Shown: positions 1 through 7,786, numbered from the stretch's first letter. The stretch: 62,361 nucleotides of DNA from Histomonas meleagridis 2922-C6/04-290x (GCA_020184695.1 JAANOX010000181.1:1-62361); one strand, 5' to 3'. A program made the numbers and translations. Notes: generated by a model not told the origin, from the letters alone.

Positions 1-659
1 GCATCCGAGAACCCGATTTTCGAAAATAACTCCATTCGATCAAATTTCGGAAGTATCAATTTGCGTATTTAGATTCTATGGATGTCAGAGTTCCTCGATC
101 ATTTGAATTGCTTTGTCCAACCCGAAATCGGTCGCTTCGTTACATTCGTTTCTCATTTCTTCTTACAGTCGGATATCATAACAGCGAAGAAGAACTTTCG
201 AATGAAATAAAACGATCGCAAAACATAAAAACGGAAGAAACGCAACATGAAGATGATGACGAAAGTTGACTCAATGATTTCCAAAAGCCAGAGTTCAGTT
301 TCGAAGACATTGGGACGCAAATGGCTGAACGCGTTGGTGAATTCATGAAAGAGATTTCGCAATTTGACTCTGTTGAAGCAGACGGTCCGATAAACTTTGA
401 TTTCGACTCGTACAAATCGAAACTTGAACATTTCCTTGACAGTAGTAGTGATGAAGAAGAAGAAGAAGATGCCTATGAAGAAGACGAACTTTTGAAGCAT
501 TTGAAAGACAAATATGAGAAAATACTCCGGAAAGTCGCCGAAGGGAAGATGAATGCGAACGAATATGTTTCGAGTTTTCTTGAGCAGTCTTATGAAACGC
601 AGCCAATCGATAGCGGGCCCACTAGTGATCTGATGCAATTATTTAATTTTCGAAAATAA
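1..659 (+). pseudogene. Degenerate or partial ORF of the tRNA-adjacent family (acidic protein; open segment 321-659)
   Basis: Nt 2-34 encode HPRTRFSKITP, matching RPRTRFSEITP at the start of the 804-aa ORF (30/33 nt identical to the reverse complement of 3119-3151). ORFs 78-269 and 321-659 are in the same frame, separated by one TGA (267-269). Left end is cut by the window. Confidence 0.4.
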
Positions 660-753
660 CGATTTTGTGCGTGGCTGAAATTCTTTTGTTGGGTTATGTA
701 TTGTAATTGTTGATAAATCTTTTTGCTGACGAGTTATAATGTTTGCTTTGTCT

Positions 754-3168
754 TCATTTTATATGGAAAATACATTTAATTCTATCATAAACTGAATGAA
801 TGCCTTCAATATTAATTAATTCATGTTGTTTTTTCGCATGATTTAAAATTCCTTTTGCATCTGAACTCCAACAGACTTTACAATGATTACACATATAACC
901 TTCTCTATGTGATAATATATCTAAGCAACTAGGAATTTTATTATTAAGCTTAGTATAAGCTATAATAGTAGACCAAAACCAACCTATAGTATTTATATTT
1001 TCATCAAATTCTTGATGTTTATGTGAAATATGAGAAATTAACGATTTATGTGCATTAGTGAAATAATCACAATTAGGGAAAGGACAAACTATAACATTGT
1101 TCCTATAAATGTCTTTCTCTAAATTATTCGAATTATTTAATATTAACCAAATTAAGTCTTTCTCTATTAAGTTTTTAATACAACCATATAAATGATTTTT
1201 ATCAGGTTTTAAACCATGTATTTTGTTCATATGATTATTTAAAGCATTTCCTGTTTTAAATTCATTCTCACATTGACATTGACATGGGAATTGGCCTGGT
1301 ACACACCATTTCCCTTCTCTAATCATTATATGGATTAATGGTTGTTTAGCTAATGGTAAGTTATCATATTTCCAATTATTAAGTTCTTTTGTTGGTCTCC
1401 ATTTATTAATTAAATTATAAATATCTTCTTTACTGACACATTTTTTAATATCTTCAATTAATTCATCATTCATGTCTACAGTTTCTTGAACTAATTCATG
1501 TTCATCTTCTTCTTCATCATTATTAGTTAAAGTATTAATATTTCTATGAAGTGGAATATTAGTGTCTGAACTTGATTCTTCTTCACTAAGATTATCTTCC
1601 ATATCTGATTTATCTGAAGTAGAAATTGTGAAATAGTTACTTAAGTTTAAGACTTTAGGAGTATGTTTATACATAATTTCAAATTCAGGAATATCAATAT
1701 TTATCGTTCTTTTAATTGGGTTAAAACAAATCTCATTTTCTTCAATATTAACAATTTGAGTCTTCAACGTTTTGTTTACATCTATTTTAAGTTGTTCAAT
1801 TAACGCTGTTTCTGTTTTATTCCTAAATAAACTTTCTACAAAAAGAGATTCAACAATAGGTTTTGTGGTTTTCTTAATAGCTTCTGGTATAATATGTAAA
1901 GATTCTACATCTGGGTTAATAGTTTTATTATTTAAATTCGGAATAATTTGTAATGAATCAACATTCGAATTAATAATTTTATTGTTCATAACAGGTTTAA
2001 CATTCAAAGAATCAATATTAGGATTAACTTCAACATTATTATACACAGGGTTTGCTTTTACTGAATCTATTCCTGTATTTACTTGTATGTCATTAAATTT
2101 GGGAATTGCATGTACAGAATCAATGTTAGTTGTAATTATTTTCTCATTAAATTTTGGTTCTGCTGTTAAAGAATCAATATTAGTTGAGATTGTTCTTTCA
2201 TTAATTATCGGATTAACTTCTAAAGAATCAACCTGAGTATCTACTGTTTTCTCATTTTGTATTTGATTCACATGTAACGATTCAATAACTGGATTTGTAG
2301 TAATTGATTTCTCGATTGGTGTAACTGAATTGATTGGAGATTCACTATAATTAACTTGATTAAGTTGATTAAATTGATTTCTCGGCATATCTGTGAATTG
2401 TAACTCATTATGTATCATGTTGTGGTTAATTTGATTAATTGATCTTAAATCGATCTGACCAATGTTATAGAAATGACATGTCGCCCATATATTTTGTGTG
2501 TTGTTATTAACTATTTCAACATTTAAATTAATAGCTTTCTGGATAAGATACTTATTTGCAACATTAAATATATTTTGAACTTTTGGATTATCACTATTTA
2601 ACCGAAATGGTAATTCTCTAGGTCTGGTTGGTCCTACGAAAGTTCTTAAATCAAACACACCTCTCTCAATTTCGTCGGACGATGTGAGTCTTGGTGGAAA
2701 ATTAAGGTTGATTAACAGGTTTCCTTCTTGAATAATGCATTGATTTCGGCATAAAACTAACCCTCTTTCTTCGTTGATAAATATTGGTAGTAAAAACGAA
2801 ATATGTGGATCTGATGAAATAATTACCCATTGAGGTGGGACTCCTTCTTCTCCATATAAATCGGGGTTTGGGTTTGGATTATAATGAATACCACTAACAA
2901 GAAGGAATTCTTGTTGAAGTGGTTCACTAAAATTAAAATCAATTTCGTTATCTTTTTTCTCGCAAATCTGAGGGGTTTCAGCAGGTGAAGGACATCGTCG
3001 TAGGTGCTTCTGTATAATAGGAGATCGTTCAAGTCGTTTACGCATTTCCGAATCGTCGATATAATTTATTGATCGAAATTTCGATTCGCCAAAAAGGGTA
3101 TCATTAGAGTGCCCTGGGGGAGTTATTTCCGAAAATCGAGTTCTCGGACGCAAAAAATCAATATTCAT
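754..3168 (-). CDS. 804-aa protein: unrecognised N-terminal domain, 18-aa repeats, acidic linker, three C-terminal C2H2-like zinc fingers (possible mobile-element protein)
   Basis: Long uninterrupted ORF. Fingers: CQCENEFKTGNALNNHMNKIH, CPFPNCDYFTNAHKSLISHISHKH, CNHCKVCWSSDAKGILNHAKKQH. The N-terminal domain is shared with ORF 5099-5866. No RT or transposase motifs seen. Confidence 0.8.
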   Translation of the reverse strand: MNIDFLRPRTRFSEITPPGHSNDTLFGESKFRSINYIDDSEMRKRLERSPIIQKHLRRCPSPAETPQICEKKDNEIDFNFSEPLQQEFLLVSGIHYNPNPNPDLYGEEGVPPQWVIISSDPHISFLLPIFINEERGLVLCRNQCIIQEGNLLINLNFPPRLTSSDEIERGVFDLRTFVGPTRPRELPFRLNSDNPKVQNIFNVANKYLIQKAINLNVEIVNNNTQNIWATCHFYNIGQIDLRSINQINHNMIHNELQFTDMPRNQFNQLNQVNYSESPINSVTPIEKSITTNPVIESLHVNQIQNEKTVDTQVDSLEVNPIINERTISTNIDSLTAEPKFNEKIITTNIDSVHAIPKFNDIQVNTGIDSVKANPVYNNVEVNPNIDSLNVKPVMNNKIINSNVDSLQIIPNLNNKTINPDVESLHIIPEAIKKTTKPIVESLFVESLFRNKTETALIEQLKIDVNKTLKTQIVNIEENEICFNPIKRTINIDIPEFEIMYKHTPKVLNLSNYFTISTSDKSDMEDNLSEEESSSDTNIPLHRNINTLTNNDEEEDEHELVQETVDMNDELIEDIKKCVSKEDIYNLINKWRPTKELNNWKYDNLPLAKQPLIHIMIREGKWCVPGQFPCQCQCENEFKTGNALNNHMNKIHGLKPDKNHLYGCIKNLIEKDLIWLILNNSNNLEKDIYRNNVIVCPFPNCDYFTNAHKSLISHISHKHQEFDENINTIGWFWSTIIAYTKLNNKIPSCLDILSHREGYMCNHCKVCWSSDAKGILNHAKKQHELINIEGIHSVYDRIKCIFHIK
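1780..2298 (-). repeat. About 10 degenerate 18-aa tandem repeats within the 804-aa ORF
   Basis: Recurring [VI][DE]S[LV]xxxP motif at an 18-residue period (VIESLHVNQ, QVDSLEVNP, NIDSLTAEP, NIDSVHAIP, GIDSVKANP, NIDSLNVKP, NVDSLQIIP, DVESLHIIP, IVESLFVES). Confidence 0.85.
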
Positions 3169-3176
3169 GAAAAATC

Positions 3177-3183
3177 AAAAAAA
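3177..3183 (-). terminator. T7 run directly after the displaced tRNA 3' end (probable original Pol III terminator)
   Basis: Minus strand reads CCACACGGGAGGAGA-TTTTTTT. Confidence 0.6.
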
Positions 3184-3198
3184 TCTCCTCCCGTGTGG
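3184..3198 (-). repeat. Displaced copy of the tRNA-Asn 3' end (15-bp perfect direct repeat of 5867-5881)
   Basis: Plus-strand TCTCCTCCCGTGTGG occurs at both 3184-3198 and 5867-5881; flanking bases differ on both sides. Confidence 0.95.
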
Positions 3199-3254
3199 TT
3201 TATTCATTAAATATCATTATAATTAGGTGTTTTAAAGATCAAAAGGAATTAAAA

Positions 3255-3782
3255 TCAAAATGTGTGAACCTTGAGGATTTGTTGCCAACGGAAGGGGCCA
3301 ACAATCCAATTGGAAACTGGCATCATGAACTTACTGAACCTAGTGAACCCACTGAACATATTGAACATATTGTACCAATTAAGGACTGAACAAAATAAAG
3401 GGATTAACTTATGTCGCAAAACGAGACCTGTGTAGCCAACGGAACCAAATTCATCTTCAATCTTCTTTGTTTCCAAATTTCTCAATACTGAAATTAATAA
3501 AATATTTAAATTAAAGAAAATGTTTGACGAGCGGAGACGCGAAGGCTGATAAGGGTTTTTGTTCCTTCTGATCGTTCCGAGTACAATCAAAATATTTCTT
3601 CGTTTTAAATATTTATTAATACTTTCTGTTGATAATTTATTCCTTGTTACACTTACATTTGAATACATCAAATAAATATACAATATGTTCTTATCTAAAA
3701 ATATATAAATTTCAATAAGCAATAATAATAAACTATTAAGATTGAGATTGAGATTAAGATTAAGAATTGTTAAAATCTTCAA
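3255..3782 (-). CDS. Hypothetical hydrophobic ORF fragment in the 3' part of the element
   Basis: Open frame with a non-ATG start and low complexity (LNLNLNLNL from ATTGAG/ATTAAG repeats); contains one copy of the RRNKNP motif. Confidence 0.2.
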   Translation of the reverse strand: MKILTILNLNLNLNLNSLLLLLIEIYIFLDKNILYIYLMYSNVSVTRNKLSTESINKYLKRRNILIVLGTIRRNKNPYQPSRLRSSNIFFNLNILLISVLRNLETKKIEDEFGSVGYTGLVLRHKLIPLFCSVLNWYNMFNMFSGFTRFSKFMMPVSNWIVGPFRWQQILKVHTF

Positions 3783-4205
3783 ATTAATGAGATCTAAAAC
3801 AAAGAAGTTGTTTGATTTACAAATACGCGAAGGCTGATAGGGTTTTTCTTCCTTCTAAACATATTTGATGAAAACAAAAAATTACTATGTTTAAGAATGG
3901 TAAACAGATATGAAGATTGAATAAAATAAATGCTTATTAAAAACTAATAAATTGAACAATTTTTATAAGTGAGTAAAATAGTATAGATAAGAAATAAGGG
4001 ATAATTGATGTTATAAAGTTAATTCCTAAGATAATTATATTTCCAATTCGAATTGTCTGAAGAATTGATATGTCGAGAAGTGAATTATTTAATAAAGTAT
4101 ATAATAATAATTGAGGTAAAGCGATGAAATTGTCTAATATCAAATAGAATAATGATTTACTAAATCTACAATTACCTGAAGGCTTAAGGGGTTTTTGTTC
4201 CTTCT
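3537..4205. repeat. Three dispersed copies of a ~30-nt motif GAAGGCT..AGGGTTTTT.TTCCTTCT (3537-3569, 3825-3856, 4178-4205)
   Basis: Read directly: ACGCGAAGGCTGATAAGGGTTTTTGTTCCTTCT; ACGCGAAGGCTGATAGGGTTTTTCTTCCTTCT; GAAGGCTTAAGGGGTTTTTGTTCCTTCT. Confidence 0.9.
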
Positions 4206-4311
4206 ATAAGTAATATGTAGAATTAATGATAACCAAATATTCCTTTTAATGTTAAACAATTTCATATATTTTGAATTAATTATTATTAAATACTTCGAAT
4301 TCAACATATGA

Positions 4312-5115
4312 TTAAAAAGCTTGAATCGAATAATCAATAAAATTATTAGTTAAAGGATCTGGATCAAGATCGAATATATTAATAAAGGCATCCAGATCCT
4401 TAACTAATATTAACTTCTCTTTTAATTTAACTCTAGCCACGCCGTCATCAGTAAATAAGAAACAATAACTTTCCGGGTGTTGATAATGATAAGTTAATGA
4501 ATTAAGTAAGTTAAAAGTGAATAATATATTATGAGATTTGAAGTTTTGATAATTAATTATAATATTGAAACATTTTAACATATCAGTCAAATTTTTAATA
4601 TTTGTAATTTCATTGTCGTTATAATTATTATTGTCATTAATATTATTTATCATATGATTCTCATCAGAATTTTCATTAACTTTCATTTTTTGATTTTCTT
4701 TAATCTCTGCTTTATTAGACTCCAGATCTTTATGCTCATCATTGTCCTTAATATCTAAAGAACTATTGAACTGCGACCTTACTGTCAAGTAGCATTGTAG
4801 ATATAAAGAAATTAAGAAAGATATTGATTCATTAGATGTAAAAGATCCAAGAACATCTCTTTCATATAAAAACGATGAATAAGTCTTTTCAGTTTGTCTT
4901 TCATTAATCATCTTGATTACAGCAAGATTCTTTTGTTTAAGGTTCACATGTTCGTTATTAAAAATATCTTTAATTTCCTCATCAATATTCTCAAATAAAT
5001 TTGGTGTATTAGCAAATATTTCTCGGAAAGATTCAATATTCATGTTTGAACTAATTGTATATTTAATCGAATCATGTGTATCAAATAAATATCTTGAGTT
5101 ATATTTCAAACCCAT
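4312..5115 (-). CDS. Element ORF2, hypothetical protein (~267 aa from the ATG at 5115)
   Basis: Open frame overlapping the stop of ORF1 by 17 nt; Asn-rich linker; no family recognised. Confidence 0.55.
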   Translation of the reverse strand: MGLKYNSRYLFDTHDSIKYTISSNMNIESFREIFANTPNLFENIDEEIKDIFNNEHVNLKQKNLAVIKMINERQTEKTYSSFLYERDVLGSFTSNESISFLISLYLQCYLTVRSQFNSSLDIKDNDEHKDLESNKAEIKENQKMKVNENSDENHMINNINDNNNYNDNEITNIKNLTDMLKCFNIIINYQNFKSHNILFTFNLLNSLTYHYQHPESYCFLFTDDGVARVKLKEKLILVKDLDAFINIFDLDPDPLTNNFIDYSIQAF

Positions 5116-5866
5116 GTAAATAATCAATCAAAAGTCTTGAAACATTAATGATTTTAGAAATAAAATCATAATCTTCACTTAAATTAATAATAATATTTGA
5201 ATAAGTAATATAAAATTTAGCAATGCTTCTATAATATTTCGTTTTATGATTAAAAATGTTAACTGGTTGAAAATTCTTATAATATAATAAATTTTGGTTA
5301 AAGAAAAGATTAAGATTTATAACATTATTATCAATTTCATATTGTGTAAGTTCAAATGGTTCTAAACTAACATCTAATCTAAGACATTTATCTTGATCAA
5401 TAATACAATGACCTCTCTGAATAATTAAGCAATCTAGATTTGAAATATAAACAGGTAAATGGACACTAATATTCGGGTCAGCACTAATTATAATTGATGA
5501 AGGTAATGGTTTGTTGCCAACATTAAATGGGTACCATTTGTCAGGACGATAATGTAAACCTTTTAAAAGTAGGATTTCGTATTGAAAAGGACGGCCATGG
5601 TCGATGGACCGAAAAGGGTAAAATCTTTGTTCTTCTATCTCGACTCCTGAGGGTAATCCTGAGACATTAAGCATATGATTAATGAGTAATGGCTGAGTAT
5701 AGTGTGGCAAAGGGGTAGACTTAATGAATTGTGGTAAATAATTAGGTATGCATTTCGAAGAATTTGCTATGTTTTGATCAAAAAGTATATTATCTTGTTG
5801 TGTAGATGGTCTTGAATCATATTTTCGATTTTCAGCGTGTAAAAATGACTGTGTAAAAAAATTCAT
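5099..5866 (-). CDS. Element ORF1 (MNFFTQ..., ~255 aa) sharing a ~95-aa domain with the 804-aa ORF
   Basis: YEILLLKGLHYRP...IIISADPNISVHLPVYI...RGHCII...LTQYEIDNNVINL aligns by eye with QEFLLVSGIHYNP...VIISSDPHISFLLPIFI...RNQCII...LTSSDEIERGVFDL. The first ATG outside the tRNA is at 5866. Confidence 0.7.
   Translation of the reverse strand: MNFFTQSFLHAENRKYDSRPSTQQDNILFDQNIANSSKCIPNYLPQFIKSTPLPHYTQPLLINHMLNVSGLPSGVEIEEQRFYPFRSIDHGRPFQYEILLLKGLHYRPDKWYPFNVGNKPLPSSIIISADPNISVHLPVYISNLDCLIIQRGHCIIDQDKCLRLDVSLEPFELTQYEIDNNVINLNLFFNQNLLYYKNFQPVNIFNHKTKYYRSIAKFYITYSNIIINLSEDYDFISKIINVSRLLIDYLHGFEI
5855..5861 (-). terminator. T7 run (Pol III terminator for the intact tRNA), lying inside the first codons of ORF1
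   Basis: Minus strand: ...GGGAGGAG A ATG AAT TTT TTT ACA. Confidence 0.6.
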
Positions 5867-5867
5867 T

Positions 5868-5941
5868 CTCCTCCCGTGTGGCTCGAACACACGACTTCCA
5901 GATTAACAGTCTGACACTCTAACCAACTGAGTTAGGGAGGA
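5868..5941 (-). tRNA. tRNA-Asn (GTT)
   Basis: Full cloverleaf: acceptor TCCTCCC/GGGAGGA, D stem ACTC/GAGT, anticodon arm TCAGA-CTGTTAA-TCTGG, T arm GTGTG-TTCGAGC-CACAC, discriminator G73; no encoded CCA (eukaryote-like). Confidence 0.96.
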
Positions 5942-6126
5942 AGCCTGTAGATATTTAAATAATTATTATATAATAATTATTTTAATTATCATTTTTTAAA
6001 AAATCATTTTATTTATGAATTTTAACAATAATTTTTTTTGTTAATAACGCATTTTTATTCCAATGAATTTTTTGATATATTAAAAATTATGATTAAAATT
6101 TTAATTATGTTGATTTTTAAATTTAT

Positions 6127-6606
6127 TTATCTTAATGCACTTGCAATTTTTCCTCTAAAACTCTTTATTTCATTTAAAATTGTTTTAATGCTTTCTTCAT
6201 CGTTCTTTATACAACGAGAAACAGCACGATCGCAAATAACACAATTTGTTTGTTCATCTATTTTAGCATCGATTAGGTTTGAAGCCATAAGATCTATAAC
6301 CAATGATTCTATATCAATGATGTTATCGATCTTTAATTCTTCTTTGATTTTTCCAAATGAAATTTTTGATCCTTTCGCAAAAAGAGATAATAGTGTTAAT
6401 TTCTTGAGTTTTTTGGCAGCTTCACTGTTTGGATACAAACGAAGTTGCTCAGGAAGTGATTTCTCAATAGATAGATAATCATTCCAAGAACCATATGCAA
6501 ACAAGGAGATTAACTTATGTTCATTACTACCTTCTTCGAAGTCATTTAAGTAAACGTCTAAAAACATTTCATTTGGATTATTGAGAATATCTTTTATGTT
6601 GCTCAT
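6127..6606 (-). CDS. PCI-domain protein, COP9 signalosome subunit 7-like
   Basis: LFAYGSWNDY, KLKKLTLLSL, IESLVIDLMASNLIDAKIDEQ match the CSN7/eIF3m PCI pattern. Confidence 0.75.
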   Translation of the reverse strand: MSNIKDILNNPNEMFLDVYLNDFEEGSNEHKLISLFAYGSWNDYLSIEKSLPEQLRLYPNSEAAKKLKKLTLLSLFAKGSKISFGKIKEELKIDNIIDIESLVIDLMASNLIDAKIDEQTNCVICDRAVSRCIKNDEESIKTILNEIKSFRGKIASALR

Positions 6607-6676
6607 GTTTTATTGGCGAACGTTAACCAAAGTGTCGTTTATAAATGTAAACGATAGAATTTTTTTTGGGTTAGAA

Positions 6677-7786
6677 ATGAATGAATCAGAAATATTTATT
6701 TCATCAGATCTAGATGACATGTCTTTTGAAATGAAGCAATTACAAAACAAAATAAATAGGGTCAAAATGGAAATTTATTCACCAAATTCCAATTCATTTC
6801 CGAATTATAAATATATAATAAAGTCATTAACCAAACGTAATCAACGTCTCAAAGAAGAGGTTCACACACTCAAGAGGCAACAAAAGAAAATTTTTGATTT
6901 ATTCCAAATAAATGATTTTCAAACTCTTTTTGAAAAATTAAAAAAGATTTGTTTGGATTACAATGGCGAATCTTCTTTTCAAACTGAGAATCAAAATCTG
7001 AAAAAGAAAAATTATCAATTACATCTTTTGCTTAAAGATCTTCAAACTAAAAACTACAATTTATCAATTGATAAGATGAACATTCTAGGTATAACTGATA
7101 CTCTTAAATCACAAAATGAACAACTTTCTCAGGAATCCAATTCTCATATACAAAAAATTACTGAATTGCAAGACACAATCCACAGGTGCGACAAAAAACT
7201 TTCTCAACTCATCAAAGCCAATCAGTCTTATGAACAACAAAACAAATCCTTGACGACAACAATTTCATTACTTGAATCAGATATCAATTCCCTCAAATCA
7301 CAAAACGCCGAATTAAACGTCGTTATCTTTGATTTAAAGAATGCCAACTCACAGCTGAATGAAGACAATCAAGTAATGAAGCAAACAATTAATTCGTTAA
7401 CTTTAAGTGCAAAACAAACAAATCAAAATAATACAAATTTTAATCACCAACAAAATATAATTAAATTTTCGCAATTAATTTATAAATTAATTTATAAATT
7501 TAAAAATGAATTTAATTCAAGAACAAAAAAATTAATTCAACAAATGAATTTAATCAATATGAAAATGAACGAAATTAAAACTAATGTAATATTTCAATAT
7601 GTAAATGTGCTTAATAATTCACAAAAACTTATCGATGCAACATGGAAACTATTTGGTGAGCAAAGGCCCCCGAAACTGAGAAATTTTGCAAATGATCCAC
7701 AGAAACTTCAGTTCATTGTAAATGGGCTAATACAACTGCAGAACGCAGGTGTGCAAGCAATGAGAATTAAGGCAAGAAAAGAGTAA
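6677..7786 (+). CDS. Coiled-coil protein of unknown function
   Basis: Heptad-rich ORF; likely start at ATG 6677, divergent from the PCI gene across about 70 bp. Confidence 0.7.
   Translation: MNESEIFISSDLDDMSFEMKQLQNKINRVKMEIYSPNSNSFPNYKYIIKSLTKRNQRLKEEVHTLKRQQKKIFDLFQINDFQTLFEKLKKICLDYNGESSFQTENQNLKKKNYQLHLLLKDLQTKNYNLSIDKMNILGITDTLKSQNEQLSQESNSHIQKITELQDTIHRCDKKLSQLIKANQSYEQQNKSLTTTISLLESDINSLKSQNAELNVVIFDLKNANSQLNEDNQVMKQTINSLTLSAKQTNQNNTNFNHQQNIIKFSQLIYKLIYKFKNEFNSRTKKLIQQMNLINMKMNEIKTNVIFQYVNVLNNSQKLIDATWKLFGEQRPPKLRNFANDPQKLQFIVNGLIQLQNAGVQAMRIKARKE

What the first reader, a model, noticed from the sequence alone, without database searches (positions are those of the whole stretch)
3184..5941. 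2.7-kb element integrated at the 3' end of tRNA-Asn with a 15-bp duplication that leaves the tRNA intact and re-terminated
Seen: the last 14 nt of the tRNA plus one trailer base (CCACACGGGAGGAGA) recur perfectly at 3184-3198. The displaced copy is followed by T7, the expected original terminator, and the element supplies a new T7 within 6-12 nt of the intact tRNA. The element ends in AATAAA at the junction. Known: tRNA 3' ends are classic att sites for prokaryotic integrative elements, and 7-20 bp TSDs are typical of target-primed non-LTR retrotransposons, some of which target tRNA genes. Inference: a tRNA-targeted element in a parabasalid, with no recognisable RT or recombinase (non-autonomous, or novel enzymology).
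Basis: partly seen in the sequence, partly recalled or inferred. Interest (0 to 1): 0.85.

Follow-up and report, generated by a model that had tools for sequence, protein, structure and literature searches.

The report
RT-less partner of tRNA-Asn retrotransposons
The 2.7-kb insert behind the tRNA-Asn gene is a real mobile element: a partner without reverse transcriptase of an R2-like retrotransposon family that inserts only at the 3' end of tRNA-Asn genes and rebuilds the tRNA as it does so, a known kind of element with a few unusual features.

Summary
The 15-mer CCACACGGGAGGAGA (minus strand) lies at 5867-5881, as the 3' end of an intact tRNA-Asn(GUU), and again alone at 3184-3198. Chance expects 0.01 copies.

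The 2,668 bp between the two copies (element "B") belong to a genome-wide family. The genome holds 24 exact 15-mers, 12 in tRNA-Asn genes and 12 orphans. Orphans are almost always preceded by ...AATGAATAAA. Ten of 11 assessable tRNA-Asn genes carry an element.

Full-length relatives encode one ORF with C2H2 fingers, reverse transcriptase, a CCHC knuckle and a restriction-like endonuclease. Their best solved-structure matches are R2 proteins (E 2e-50). Four metagenome contigs from other organisms carry intact elements in tandem between the same 15-mer.

B has no RT or nuclease, so it is non-autonomous. It is not junk: its copies tile one ~873-codon frame that shares the family's N-terminal domain. 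A 735-aa homologue (39% identity) is flanked by the same target elsewhere. B also carries three conserved stem-loops.

The "gene" at 754-3168 is the 5' part of another copy. tRNA-targeting RLE elements are already published (NeSL-1_TV, tRNA-Pro). This scan had already noted the family on other DNA of this genome.

The parts
5868..5941 (-). Intact tRNA-Asn(GUU), the target gene
   Evidence: ARAGORN. Rfam RF00005, 61.7 bits, model positions 1-71 of 71.
5867..5881 (-). Upstream copy of the 15-bp target duplication: the last 14 nt of the tRNA plus trailer A
   Evidence: Exact pattern match. The same 15-mer ends 12 tRNA-Asn genes in the genome.
3199..5866 (-). Element B, 2,668 bp: an RT-less, protein-coding, non-autonomous member of the tRNA-Asn-specific R2-like family
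   Evidence: It is 99% identical to two tandem copies on contig C174 and 92% identical over 1.88 kb to a copy on C175. No Pfam RT or nuclease. No LTRs or terminal inverted repeats.
5855..5866 (-). B start: ATG directly after the duplication, with T7 inside codons 2-4 (Met-Asn-Phe-Phe). It can serve as a replacement Pol III terminator 6-12 nt after the tRNA
   Evidence: Read directly. Every element 5' end in the family has a run of at least 5 T within about 12 nt of the 15-mer. The terminator function is inferred.
5222..5605 (-). Family-specific N-terminal domain (~110-130 aa) of the B protein
   Evidence: 33% identity to the A-family ORF, E 1e-12. Collinear with the N-terminus of the full-length P0001, E 9e-13. 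Aligned with 8 full-length metagenomic ORFs (A1). AlphaFold2 gives pLDDT 67 and a beta-rich model. No PDB fold match.
3255..5866 (-). One underlying B reading frame of about 873 codons, broken in this copy into open pieces 5102-5866, 4315-5127, 4143-4349, 3940-4203, 3797-3943 and 3258-3854
   Evidence: Open segments of the three copies tile the whole element and end at one common stop. The last 447 codons have 0 stops, against 27-58 in the other five frames. Shuffles reach at most 127 open codons. The five frame breaks coincide with indels that short-read contigs show against the window at 5111, 4314, 4191, 3938/3960 and 3842 (table 4).
4164..4206 (-). Conserved stem-loop motif, copy 1: inner stem GAAGG/CCTTC, conserved 17-19-nt loop, variable outer stem
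3815..3857 (-). Conserved stem-loop motif, copy 2
   Evidence: z -2.26; flank duplex p 0.004.
3527..3569 (-). Conserved stem-loop motif, copy 3
3199..3233 (-). B 3' tail ending in AATGAATAAA, shared with an autonomous subfamily (C38/C167 type). Presumed recognition and priming end for reverse transcription
   Evidence: 89.6% identity over 48 nt (tail plus 15-mer) to the C38 element end. Tails compared. AATAAA lies 0-10 nt before the 15-mer in all relatives. The function is inferred.
3184..3198 (-). Downstream (orphan) copy of the 15-bp target duplication
   Evidence: It is one of 12 orphan exact copies in the genome. With up to 3 mismatches allowed, at least 15 junctions of the AATAAA+15-mer form are found.
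772..3183 (-). 5' 2.4 kb of a second, older element (family A): leader T7GAT5C 3169-3183; ORF 754-3168; N-terminal domain 2524-2931; three C2H2-like fingers at 1216-1284, 1015-1086 and 823-891. It is cut off at about 772, before the RT
   Evidence: The same 5' end follows 7 tRNA-Asn genes and 6 or more orphans. It matches contig C20 at 98.5% up to window 772 only, whereas on C20 the frame runs on into RT and endonuclease. Finger motifs found by pattern.

Best explanation
Window 3199-5866 is a non-autonomous member ("B") of a family of R2-like, restriction-like-endonuclease-bearing non-LTR retrotransposons. The family inserts only into the 3' end of tRNA-Asn(GUU) genes.

Likely mechanism, inferred by analogy with R2:
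- The protein of an autonomous member carries an N-terminal family domain, C2H2 fingers, RT, a CCHC knuckle and a PD-(D/E)xK nuclease.
- It nicks the bottom strand opposite the boundary between the T-loop and the T-stem.
- It uses that 3'-OH to prime reverse transcription from the element RNA's ...AAUGAAUAAA end.
- It cuts the top strand 15 nt further on, just after discriminator G plus A.
- Repair then leaves the 15 bp on both sides. The tRNA gene upstream stays complete, and the element's own T-run a few bases in replaces the Pol III terminator.

New insertions go into the intact tRNA and push older copies downstream. This gives head-to-tail arrays separated by orphan 15-mers. In this window the order is tRNA, then B, then the 15-mer, then a truncated family-A copy.

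B lacks RT and nuclease and must be copied in trans. It keeps the family's 5' start, N-terminal domain and 3' tail. It also carries its own ~873-codon frame and three conserved stem-loops.

Shown: the anatomy, family membership, target specificity, and the lack of RT and nuclease in B. Inferred: the nick positions, trans-mobilisation and the terminator role.
For: Target specificity and arrays
- 24 exact 15-mers in the 43-Mb genome against 0 in the reversed control. 12 lie in tRNA-Asn genes and 12 are orphans.
- 11 of 12 orphans are preceded by (A)ATAAA. 15-mers of both kinds are followed by element 5' ends.
- 10 of 11 assessable tRNA-Asn genes are occupied. The one empty site, on C87, has a host gene 44 nt downstream.
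- Arrays end in unique DNA with a T-run trailer (C38 and C42).

Enzymology of full-length members
- RVT_1 at E 1.9e-33 and 1.8e-27.
- The C20 frame reads fingers, RT (YADD), CCHC, then KPD...IEVT...K, and the element ends in AATGAATAAA plus the 15-mer.
- PDB R2 proteins 9nl3, 9dou and 8gh6 match at E 2e-50 to 3e-35, nuclease domain included.

Independent contigs
- L065, L066, L068 and L069 carry intact ORFs of 2,101-2,395 aa. Their RT is 36-71% identical to that of C20, and they sit in tandem between the exact 15-mer.

Element B
- Its N-terminus is collinear with full-length ORFs.
- Its 3' tail is shared with the C38/C167 subfamily.
- Copies lie on C174 (two, in tandem) and C175.
- A 735-aa homologue, P0121, is 39% identical (E 3e-49) and is flanked by ...AATGAATAAAAAA plus 14 of the 15 bases of the 15-mer, in tandem.

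Literature
- tRNA-gene-specific RLE elements exist, including NeSL-1_TV for tRNA-Pro in Trichomonas vaginalis (PMC4640811).
Against: - No empty allele of this particular site was found. The public runs are contigs that break at the repeat.
- The window copy and the C174 copies share 208 bp upstream of the tRNA at 99.3%. These loci are therefore related by DNA-level duplication and are not independent insertions.
- Only about 4-5 B copies exist.
- dN/dS between B and the C175 copy is 0.77, so there is no clear purifying selection within this genome.
- The nick positions and trans-mobilisation are untested.
- The 15-mer could be carried in by the element RNA rather than made by staggered cuts.
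- Placement in a clade (R2, NeSL or other) was not possible without reference sequences.
Confidence: 0.85

Rival explanations
1. The family identification stands, but this particular copy did not retrotranspose here. A tRNA-plus-B unit that already existed was copied to or from contig C174 by segmental duplication, gene conversion or unequal crossing-over.
For: The window and C174 share 208 bp upstream of the tRNA plus the tRNA at 99.3%, then B at about 99%, and they diverge abruptly further upstream. C174 has two B units in tandem, which unequal exchange between 15-mers could also make.
Against: The elements downstream of B differ between the two loci after about 94 bp. B-type copies also occur in other contexts: C175, and a read-contig junction with a different upstream tail (table 7). 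A B-type lineage with the same flanks exists in another organism.
Confidence: 0.35
2. The 15-bp repeat is not made by staggered cuts. Transcripts start in or upstream of the tRNA 3' end, so the element RNA carries the 15 nt at its 5' end, and the copy is pasted in at a near-blunt break.
For: In B the ATG follows the 15-mer with no leader at all, so a capped mRNA has to begin in tRNA sequence. 5' junctions are strikingly precise. R2 is known to use co-transcribed target sequence (my own knowledge, not tested here).
Against: A T7 run within 12 nt would stop Pol III read-through. No ribozyme or processing signal was found by Rfam. The two models give identical DNA, so sequence alone cannot separate them.
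Confidence: 0.2
3. The repeat is a relic of a tandem duplication of a whole tRNA-plus-gene unit, with no transposition.
For: Two paralogous ORFs each start right after a copy of the tRNA 3' end.
Against: Orphans keep exactly 15 bp, never more of the tRNA. They abut a conserved AATAAA tail. They occur at 12 or more places and in four unrelated metagenome contigs. The paralogues belong to RT-encoding elements.
Confidence: 0.03
4. Integration by a site-specific recombinase, as in prokaryotic tRNA-att islands, or by a DDE transposase, as in Dada elements, or by a new enzyme encoded by B itself.
For: The geometry, duplication of a tRNA 3' end that keeps the gene intact, resembles prokaryotic att sites. 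The B protein has no recognised domains.
Against: No recombinase or transposase domain occurs in any family member. RT and R2-type nuclease are present in the full-length ones. No inverted terminal repeats. B's only shared protein part is the N-terminal domain of the RT elements.
Confidence: 0.03

Closest known systems
R2 elements (R2Bm, R2Tg): 28S rDNA-specific non-LTR retrotransposons with a restriction-like endonuclease
   Same: The full-length family members have the same single-ORF layout: N-terminal zinc fingers, RT, CCHC, PD-(D/E)xK nuclease. They match solved R2 proteins over both RT and nuclease (E 2e-50). They share strict site specificity, a precise 3' junction without a poly(A) tail, and tandem or stacked insertions in a multicopy RNA gene.
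   Different: The target is the 3' end of tRNA-Asn, not 28S rDNA. The 15-bp duplication restores the target gene, whereas R2 inactivates its rDNA unit. An extra N-terminal domain of unknown fold is present, no Myb domain was detected, and Rfam found no HDV-like ribozyme.
NeSL-1_TV (Trichomonas vaginalis, tRNA-Pro) and LIN15_SM / LIN25_SM (planarian, tRNA-Arg / tRNA-Glu), from Kojima & Jurka 2015, PMC4640811
   Same: They are RLE-bearing non-LTR retrotransposons specific for tRNA genes, and one of them is from a parabasalid.
   Different: The tRNA species differs. The paper's text as held gives no insertion position or duplication length for them (one search found nothing in the supplements).
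Non-autonomous derivatives of LINE-like elements: R2 SIDEs (short internally deleted elements) and HAL1 (ORF1-only half-L1). Both recalled from my own knowledge
   Same: B lacks RT, keeps the ends of the autonomous family, uses the same target site and must be copied in trans. Plain internally deleted copies also occur here: a 2.5-kb deleted A copy on C175 and a 1.17-kb non-coding unit in L068.
   Different: B is not a simple deletion product. It keeps only the N-terminal domain, has about 640 further codons unrelated to the autonomous ORF, and carries 2-3 conserved stem-loops. It exists as a separate lineage in another organism (P0121).
Dada DNA transposons (PMC3706591, PMC8869645) and Dictyostelium TRE elements (TRE recalled from my own knowledge)
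   Same: They target multicopy small-RNA or tRNA genes as safe havens.
   Different: Dada uses a DDE transposase with short duplications and interrupts the RNA gene. TRE elements have an apurinic-type endonuclease and land beside tRNA genes, not inside them. Neither type of enzyme is present here.
Prokaryotic integrative elements at tRNA 3' ends
   Same: The outcome is the same: the element carries or creates a copy of the tRNA 3' end, so the gene stays whole.
   Different: Those use tyrosine or serine recombinases and an att core. Here the enzymology is RT plus a restriction-like nuclease, and no recombinase gene is present.

Membership tests
R2-group (RLE-bearing) site-specific non-LTR retrotransposons, tested on the family as a whole | Reverse transcriptase domain of non-LTR type | tested here: met
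   RVT_1 at E 1.9e-33 (C175 ORF) and 1.8e-27 (C235). YADD box in the C20 frame. R2 structures are the best PDB hits.
R2-group (RLE-bearing) site-specific non-LTR retrotransposons, tested on the family as a whole | C-terminal CCHC knuckle followed by a PD-(D/E)xK restriction-like endonuclease | tested here: met
   CPYC...H...C, then KPD...IEVT...K in the C20 frame. This region aligns to the R2 nuclease region of 9nl3 (domain 2, i-E 7.5e-06). Weak PD-(D/E)xK-type Pfam hit L_protein_N.
R2-group (RLE-bearing) site-specific non-LTR retrotransposons, tested on the family as a whole | N-terminal zinc-finger DNA-binding region | tested here: inconclusive
   Three C2H2-pattern motifs in the window's A ORF. 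Pfam C2H2 models hit only below their cut-offs.
R2-group (RLE-bearing) site-specific non-LTR retrotransposons, tested on the family as a whole | Insertion at one defined sequence with a constant 3' junction | tested here: met
   All junctions lie at the same 15-mer of tRNA-Asn, both in the genome and in 4 foreign contigs.
R2-group (RLE-bearing) site-specific non-LTR retrotransposons, tested on the family as a whole | Placement within a named clade (R2, R4, NeSL, Hero, Utopia) by RT phylogeny | not testable with these tools
   No reference sequences of NeSL, R4, Hero or Utopia were on hand. Only R2 proteins from the PDB and database hits named R2DM were available.
Autonomous retrotransposon, tested on element B itself (window 3199-5866) | Encodes its own RT and endonuclease | tested here: not met
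   No Pfam family at E <= 0.01 in any B ORF piece. Only a chance-level hit at E <= 1. No similarity to the RT or nuclease parts of C20.
Non-autonomous partner of the tRNA-Asn family, tested on element B | Shares the termini and target duplication of the autonomous elements | tested here: met
   Same 15-mer on both sides. The 5' ATGAAT-T7 start is like the second C235 element. The 3' ~35 nt are like the C38/C167 tails. The N-terminal domain is shared.
Non-autonomous partner of the tRNA-Asn family, tested on element B | Copies at independent target sites (evidence of mobility) | tested here: inconclusive
   There are three 99% copies, but at two loci that share their upstream flank. One 92% chimeric copy lies on C175. 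One further junction appears in read contigs. A B-type unit with the same flanks exists in another organism.
Recombinase- or transposase-driven elements (prokaryote-type integrative element, Crypton, Dada) | Tyrosine or serine recombinase, or DDE transposase, and terminal inverted repeats | tested here: not met
   No such Pfam domain in any ORF. No terminal inverted repeats.

The most novel reading that the evidence does not exclude
B-type elements are an old, conserved lineage of protein-coding retrotransposons without reverse transcriptase that hitch-hike on the tRNA-Asn-specific R2-like elements. Their protein keeps the family's orphan N-terminal domain, perhaps the part that docks on the tRNA-Asn gene or on the partner's ribonucleoprotein. 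Their RNA carries 2-3 copies of a covarying stem-loop with a conserved 17-19-nt loop, which may act as the handle for trans-mobilisation. Together with sister families at other tRNA 3' ends, this would be a radiation of 'tRNA-sparing' site-specific retrotransposons that has filled nearly every tRNA-Asn gene of the host.
Probability: 0.4. Interest if true: 0.65.

Novelty: new variant of a known kind. Interest (0 to 1): 0.5.

Why it matters
- Site-specific R2-like retrotransposons are under study as tools for targeted gene insertion. A lineage that reads a 15-bp tRNA 3' end and leaves the gene working is a natural example of harmless insertion into a multicopy gene.
- The family shows how target specificity shifts between tRNAs within one genome: Asn here, Arg(ACG) verified nearby, and other candidate tRNA-like ends.
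- It shows that an element can occupy 10 of 11 copies of a tRNA gene family without destroying them.
- The RT-less but coding partner with its own conserved RNA stem-loops is an unusual kind of non-autonomous non-LTR element. It gives a handle on what the autonomous machinery recognises.
- For annotation, the "genes" at 754-3168 and 3255-5866 should be masked as transposon ORFs. Several frame breaks here are probably assembly errors.

Tried and rejected
- Rfam at E <= 1 over window 1-7000 found only the tRNA. No HDV-like or other ribozyme lies at the 5' junction.
- The AlphaFold2 model of the N-terminal domain (pLDDT 67) had no match in the PDB by Foldseek (best E 0.6) or by VIA-align wide (best Z 2.3). 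The fold remains unassigned.
- The AlphaFold2 model of the whole B-type protein P0121, from a 7-row alignment, was unusable (pLDDT 32.5).
- ESM Atlas feature search of the B C-terminal half gave no usable hit.
- Pfam found nothing in any B piece.
- Read laying: all runs are stored as contigs that break at the 15-mer, so neither an empty allele nor transcription could be shown. It gave only relative depth (B about 5x and the A 5' end about 50x the unique flank) and indel differences.
- I looked for a paralogous empty site through the actin gene upstream of the C174 locus. The similarity to C87 is limited to actin itself, so it is not an orthologous empty site.
- Supplement search of PMC4640811 for the NeSL-1_TV insertion site returned nothing.
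- dN/dS on B against the C175 copy (0.77) is uninformative, because the C175 copy is a dead chimera.
Only natural ORF pieces were used.
Full report
**1. The observation**

The window holds one tRNA, tRNA-Asn(GTT), on the minus strand. ARAGORN places it at 5867-5942. Rfam matches 5868-5941 at 61.7 bits, full length.

The 15-mer CCACACGGGAGGAGA occurs exactly twice, at 5867-5881 and 3184-3198, both on the minus strand. Shuffles expect 0.01 copies. Read against the cloverleaf, it consists of:
- the last T-loop base;
- the 3' strand of the T stem;
- the 3' strand of the acceptor stem;
- discriminator G;
- one trailer A.

The 2,668 bp in between start with ATG directly after the tRNA copy. A T7 run lies 6-12 nt in. 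The stretch ends in AATGAATAAA directly against the orphan copy.

**2. It is a family, not a local accident**

The 43.1-Mb genome, of which this window is the first 62 kb of contig C181, has 24 exact copies of the 15-mer and none of the reversed control.
- Twelve are the ends of intact tRNA-Asn genes and twelve are orphans.
- Eleven of the twelve orphans are preceded by (A)ATAAA, mostly ...AATGAATAAA.
- The bases after a 15-mer, whether it belongs to a tRNA or is an orphan, are in most cases one of a few conserved element starts.
- The commonest start is T7-GA-T5-C-ATGAATATTGAT..., which is the start of the 804-aa ORF at window 3168-754.

That "gene" is therefore itself a repeat. I call it family A. 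The 2.7-kb insert is family B.

There are 14 tRNA-Asn genes in all. At least 15 junctions of the form AATAAA+15-mer are found when up to 3 mismatches are allowed. Of the 11 tRNA-Asn genes whose downstream side can be read:
- 7 carry an A element;
- 2 carry B;
- 1 carries a third type;
- 1 is empty (contig C87). There a host dehydrogenase-like gene starts 44 nt after the tRNA, and nothing resembles the elements.

Upstream flanks of the tRNA genes are mostly unrelated, so many different loci are occupied. Arrays end in unique DNA that begins with a T-run, as expected of the original trailer (C38 and C42).

**3. What the family is**

Contig C175 has an 841-aa ORF just upstream of an orphan 15-mer. 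It hits Pfam RVT_1 at E 1.9e-33. A C235 piece does so at 1.8e-27.

On contig C20 an open frame of more than 1,372 aa is available. Its order of parts is:
- the last C2H2-like finger of the A ORF (98.5% identical to the window at 772-900);
- a long linker;
- RT with a YADD box;
- a CPYC...H...C knuckle;
- KPD...IEVT...K.

The search gives this frame as 1,935 aa. The C20 element ends ...AATGAATAAA plus the 15-mer at the contig end.

phmmer against all PDB chains finds only R2 retrotransposon proteins: 9nl3, 9dou, 9nl2, 8gh6 and 8ibw, at E 2e-50 to 6e-34. A second aligned stretch covers the CCHC and restriction-like nuclease region. The family is therefore an R2-group, RLE-bearing, single-ORF non-LTR retrotransposon.

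A search with the C20 RT finds at least 59 RT matches in the genome, in several sub-families of 36-100% identity.

**4. Independent confirmation from other organisms**

The closest database proteins are unnamed metagenomic ORFs of 2,100-2,400 aa. I fetched their contigs.
- L065 carries a 2,101-aa ORF whose RT is 71% identical to that of C20.
- L066 carries 2,344-aa and 2,317-aa ORFs, about 36% identical.
- L068 and L069 carry further intact elements.

All of these lie head to tail, and each is bounded by the exact 15-mer CCACACGGGAGGAGA. AATAAA lies 0-10 nt before it and a T-run lies after it. Target and duplication are thus conserved over deep divergence of the enzyme. This excludes a local duplication artefact.

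A more distant relative, L067 (42% identical), ends against a different tRNA-like 3' end.

**5. Element B in detail**

Copies:
- Two further copies, 99% identical to the window copy, lie in tandem on C174 in the order tRNA, B, 15-mer, B, 15-mer, A.
- A 92% copy of B's first 1.88 kb sits in the C175 array, fused to an RT remnant.
- The stem-loop motif that marks B occurs nowhere else in the assembly.
- Short-read contig depth over B is about 5 times that of the unique flank.

B has no Pfam domain and nothing resembling fingers, RT or nuclease. It is non-autonomous.

What B shares with the autonomous elements:
- the target duplication;
- the ATGAAT-T7 start;
- about 35 nt of 3' tail, closest to the C38/C167 sub-family;
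- the first ~230 residues, which include a ~110-130-aa domain found at the N-terminus of A (33% identity, E 1e-12), of P0001 (E 9e-13) and of eight other full-length ORFs (alignment A1).

That domain gives a moderate beta-rich AlphaFold2 model with no match in the PDB.

**6. B is coding throughout**

- In all three copies the open segments overlap end to end and stop at the same column. The underlying frame has about 873 codons, with no 5' leader and a 56-nt 3' untranslated tail.
- Over the last 447 codons the frame has 0 stops, against 27-58 in the other five frames. The longest open stretch in 1,000 shuffles is 127 codons.
- The window copy has five frame breaks. Each coincides with a place where short-read contigs of the same organism show an insertion or deletion relative to the window: 5111, 4314, 4191, 3938/3960 and 3842 (table 4). 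These breaks are most simply long-read assembly errors, although contigs collapse copies and cannot prove it.

An exhaustive HMMER search with a natural 493-aa piece found P0121 at E 1.2e-13.
- P0121 is a 735-aa intact protein from a metagenome.
- It is collinear with B from the N-terminal domain to the C-terminal repeats.
- It is 39% identical to B over 321 residues, E 3e-49.
- Its 2.36-kb contig is a tandem unit flanked by ...AATGAATAAAAAA plus CCACACGGGAGGAG(T).

B-type, RT-less coding partners are therefore a lineage of their own. They are not a one-off deletion.

Within this genome, dN/dS against the chimeric C175 copy is 0.77. This is uninformative.

**7. A conserved stem-loop**

The three 43-nt direct repeats in B's 3' third lie at window 4164-4206, 3815-3857 and 3527-3569.
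- They contain AGAAGGAAC-A(4-6)-CCC-N(5-6)-GCCTTC.
- The same motif occurs in the C175 copy, twice in L070 and once in L071.
- It occurs in no autonomous element.

Folded alone, all six instances tested give the same shape: an inner GAAGG/CCUUC stem, a 17-19-nt loop, and an outer 6-8-bp stem made from different sequences in each instance.

Summed over seven instances, the flank-to-flank duplex energy is -43.3 kcal/mol. Shuffled flanks average -19.5, and the best of 2,000 shuffles reaches -37.1. The flanking codons vary in just the way that keeps pairing. The constraint is therefore on the nucleic acid, not on the peptide RRNKxPxxPS. Its role is unknown. A handle for the partner's protein is my guess.

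**8. How it most likely works**

By analogy with R2 (established for R2, inferred here), the steps are:
1. The autonomous protein binds the tRNA-Asn gene.
2. It nicks the bottom strand opposite the T-loop/T-stem boundary.
3. It primes cDNA synthesis on the RNA's ...AAUGAAUAAA end.
4. It cuts the top strand 15 nt downstream, after discriminator G plus A.
5. Fill-in duplicates the 15 bp, so the tRNA gene is left whole.
6. The element's T-run replaces the Pol III terminator. In B this run is the Phe-Phe codons. In A it is the leader.

Arrays grow at the tRNA end. Consistent with this, on C175 and C174 the units nearest the upstream (tRNA) end are the best preserved, and downstream units are deleted or degenerate. 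In this window the near-intact B lies ahead of a truncated A.

An alternative that the sequence cannot exclude is that the 15 nt travel at the 5' end of the RNA. The leaderless ATG in B hints that transcripts start in tRNA sequence.

**9. Caveat on this particular copy**

The window and C174 share 208 bp upstream of the tRNA at 99.3% and then diverge. These two loci are therefore related by DNA-level duplication or conversion of a tRNA-plus-B unit. No empty allele of this site could be shown, because the public runs are contigs that break at the repeat. I put about one chance in three on this copy having arrived by duplication rather than by its own retrotransposition. This does not affect what the element is.

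**10. The rest of the neighbourhood**

The A copy at 772-3183 stops matching C20 at 772. On C20 the frame runs on into RT, but window 1-771 is unrelated. The exception is bases 1-33, which resemble an A 5' coding region in the opposite orientation. This suggests a rearrangement or an assembly problem at the contig end.

**11. Comparison with what is known**

tRNA-gene-specific RLE retrotransposons are published: NeSL-1_TV of Trichomonas vaginalis (tRNA-Pro), and LIN15_SM and LIN25_SM of a planarian (tRNA-Arg and tRNA-Glu), in PMC4640811. I found no paper on a tRNA-Asn-specific family, or on such elements in this organism, in the searchable library.

This scan had already noted the same system on other pieces of this genome: an array of tRNA-Asn elements, the orphan N-terminal domain shared with a shorter coding partner, and sister families at other tRNAs. 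My results were obtained independently and agree. That note names the host as Histomonas. I did not test the organism's identity.

**12. Verdict**

It is a non-autonomous member of a site-specific R2-like family, which is a known kind of element. It has three uncommon traits:
- a duplication that restores the tRNA, with near-saturation of the tRNA-Asn genes;
- a conserved RT-less coding partner lineage;
- a covarying stem-loop specific to that partner.

Noticed in passing
L046 (G000:C227:112758-118223), about 4150-4600: A sister RT family (36% identical) ends ...GCTAATAAAC and is followed by an orphan AGTCCTGGGTGGTACA plus T7. That orphan is the 3' end of the tRNA-Arg(ACG) gene lying 360 bp further on, which is in turn followed by a similar T7-N-A-T6 start. 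This family has the same geometry at a different tRNA.
   Followed up: partly
L042, L054, L058 (C11, C269); L055 (C19); L056 (C61); L062 (C251); L067 (metagenome): Further RT sub-families end in ...TAAAC(A). Each is followed by a different GC-rich 16-19-mer shaped like a T-stem plus acceptor 3' strand, and then a T-run. Examples are AATCCCTGCGGGACCA, TTCCGGCTTGCCCCTC and TCCCGTCGAAGGTGAG. They are probably the 3' ends of other tRNAs. I could not identify the tRNAs because no more genome sequence could be fetched.
   Followed up: partly
window 1-771: The A copy stops matching its full-length relative at 772. Bases 1-33 resemble an A-type 5' coding region on the opposite strand, and 34-771 match nothing fetched. 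This points to a rearrangement or misassembly at the contig start.
   Followed up: partly
window 3842, 3938, 3960, 4191, 4314, 5111, also 5962 and 5998: Short-read contigs of the same organism differ from the window by 1-2-base insertions or deletions at these places. Six of them explain all five frame breaks of the B copy. The long-read assembly probably has indel errors here. An actin gene upstream of the C174 locus is likewise split over three frames.
   Followed up: partly
window 5261-5840 (run X5, record 18): One 2,104-nt contig of a 2023 run (guessed to be RNA) covers B from 3184 to 5260 and then continues at 5841-5866, skipping 580 nt of the 5' coding part. The ends are not GT..AG. It may be a deleted B variant in another sample, and it was not listed as a supported joint.
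   Followed up: no
L068 6981-8146 (metagenome contig ERZ13404983): A 1.17-kb unit without a long ORF sits between two copies of the tRNA-Asn 15-mer and alternates with full-length 7-kb elements. It looks like a short non-coding partner in another organism.
   Followed up: no
L031 (G000:C175:5020-15019), read on the minus strand: This is an array of at least four units separated by 15-mers: one with an intact 841-aa RT ORF, a 2.5-kb internally deleted A, a B-like 5' half fused to an RT remnant (its upstream 15-mer degraded to TTACAC...), and a degenerate A. The third unit may be a template-switch chimera.
   Followed up: partly
protein P0029: An RT protein of this eukaryotic family (31% identical to the C20 RT-to-nuclease region used as query) is filed in NCBI under a Mycoplasmoidaceae metagenome-assembled genome. 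This is probably eukaryotic (parabasalid-like) DNA binned into a bacterial MAG.
   Followed up: no
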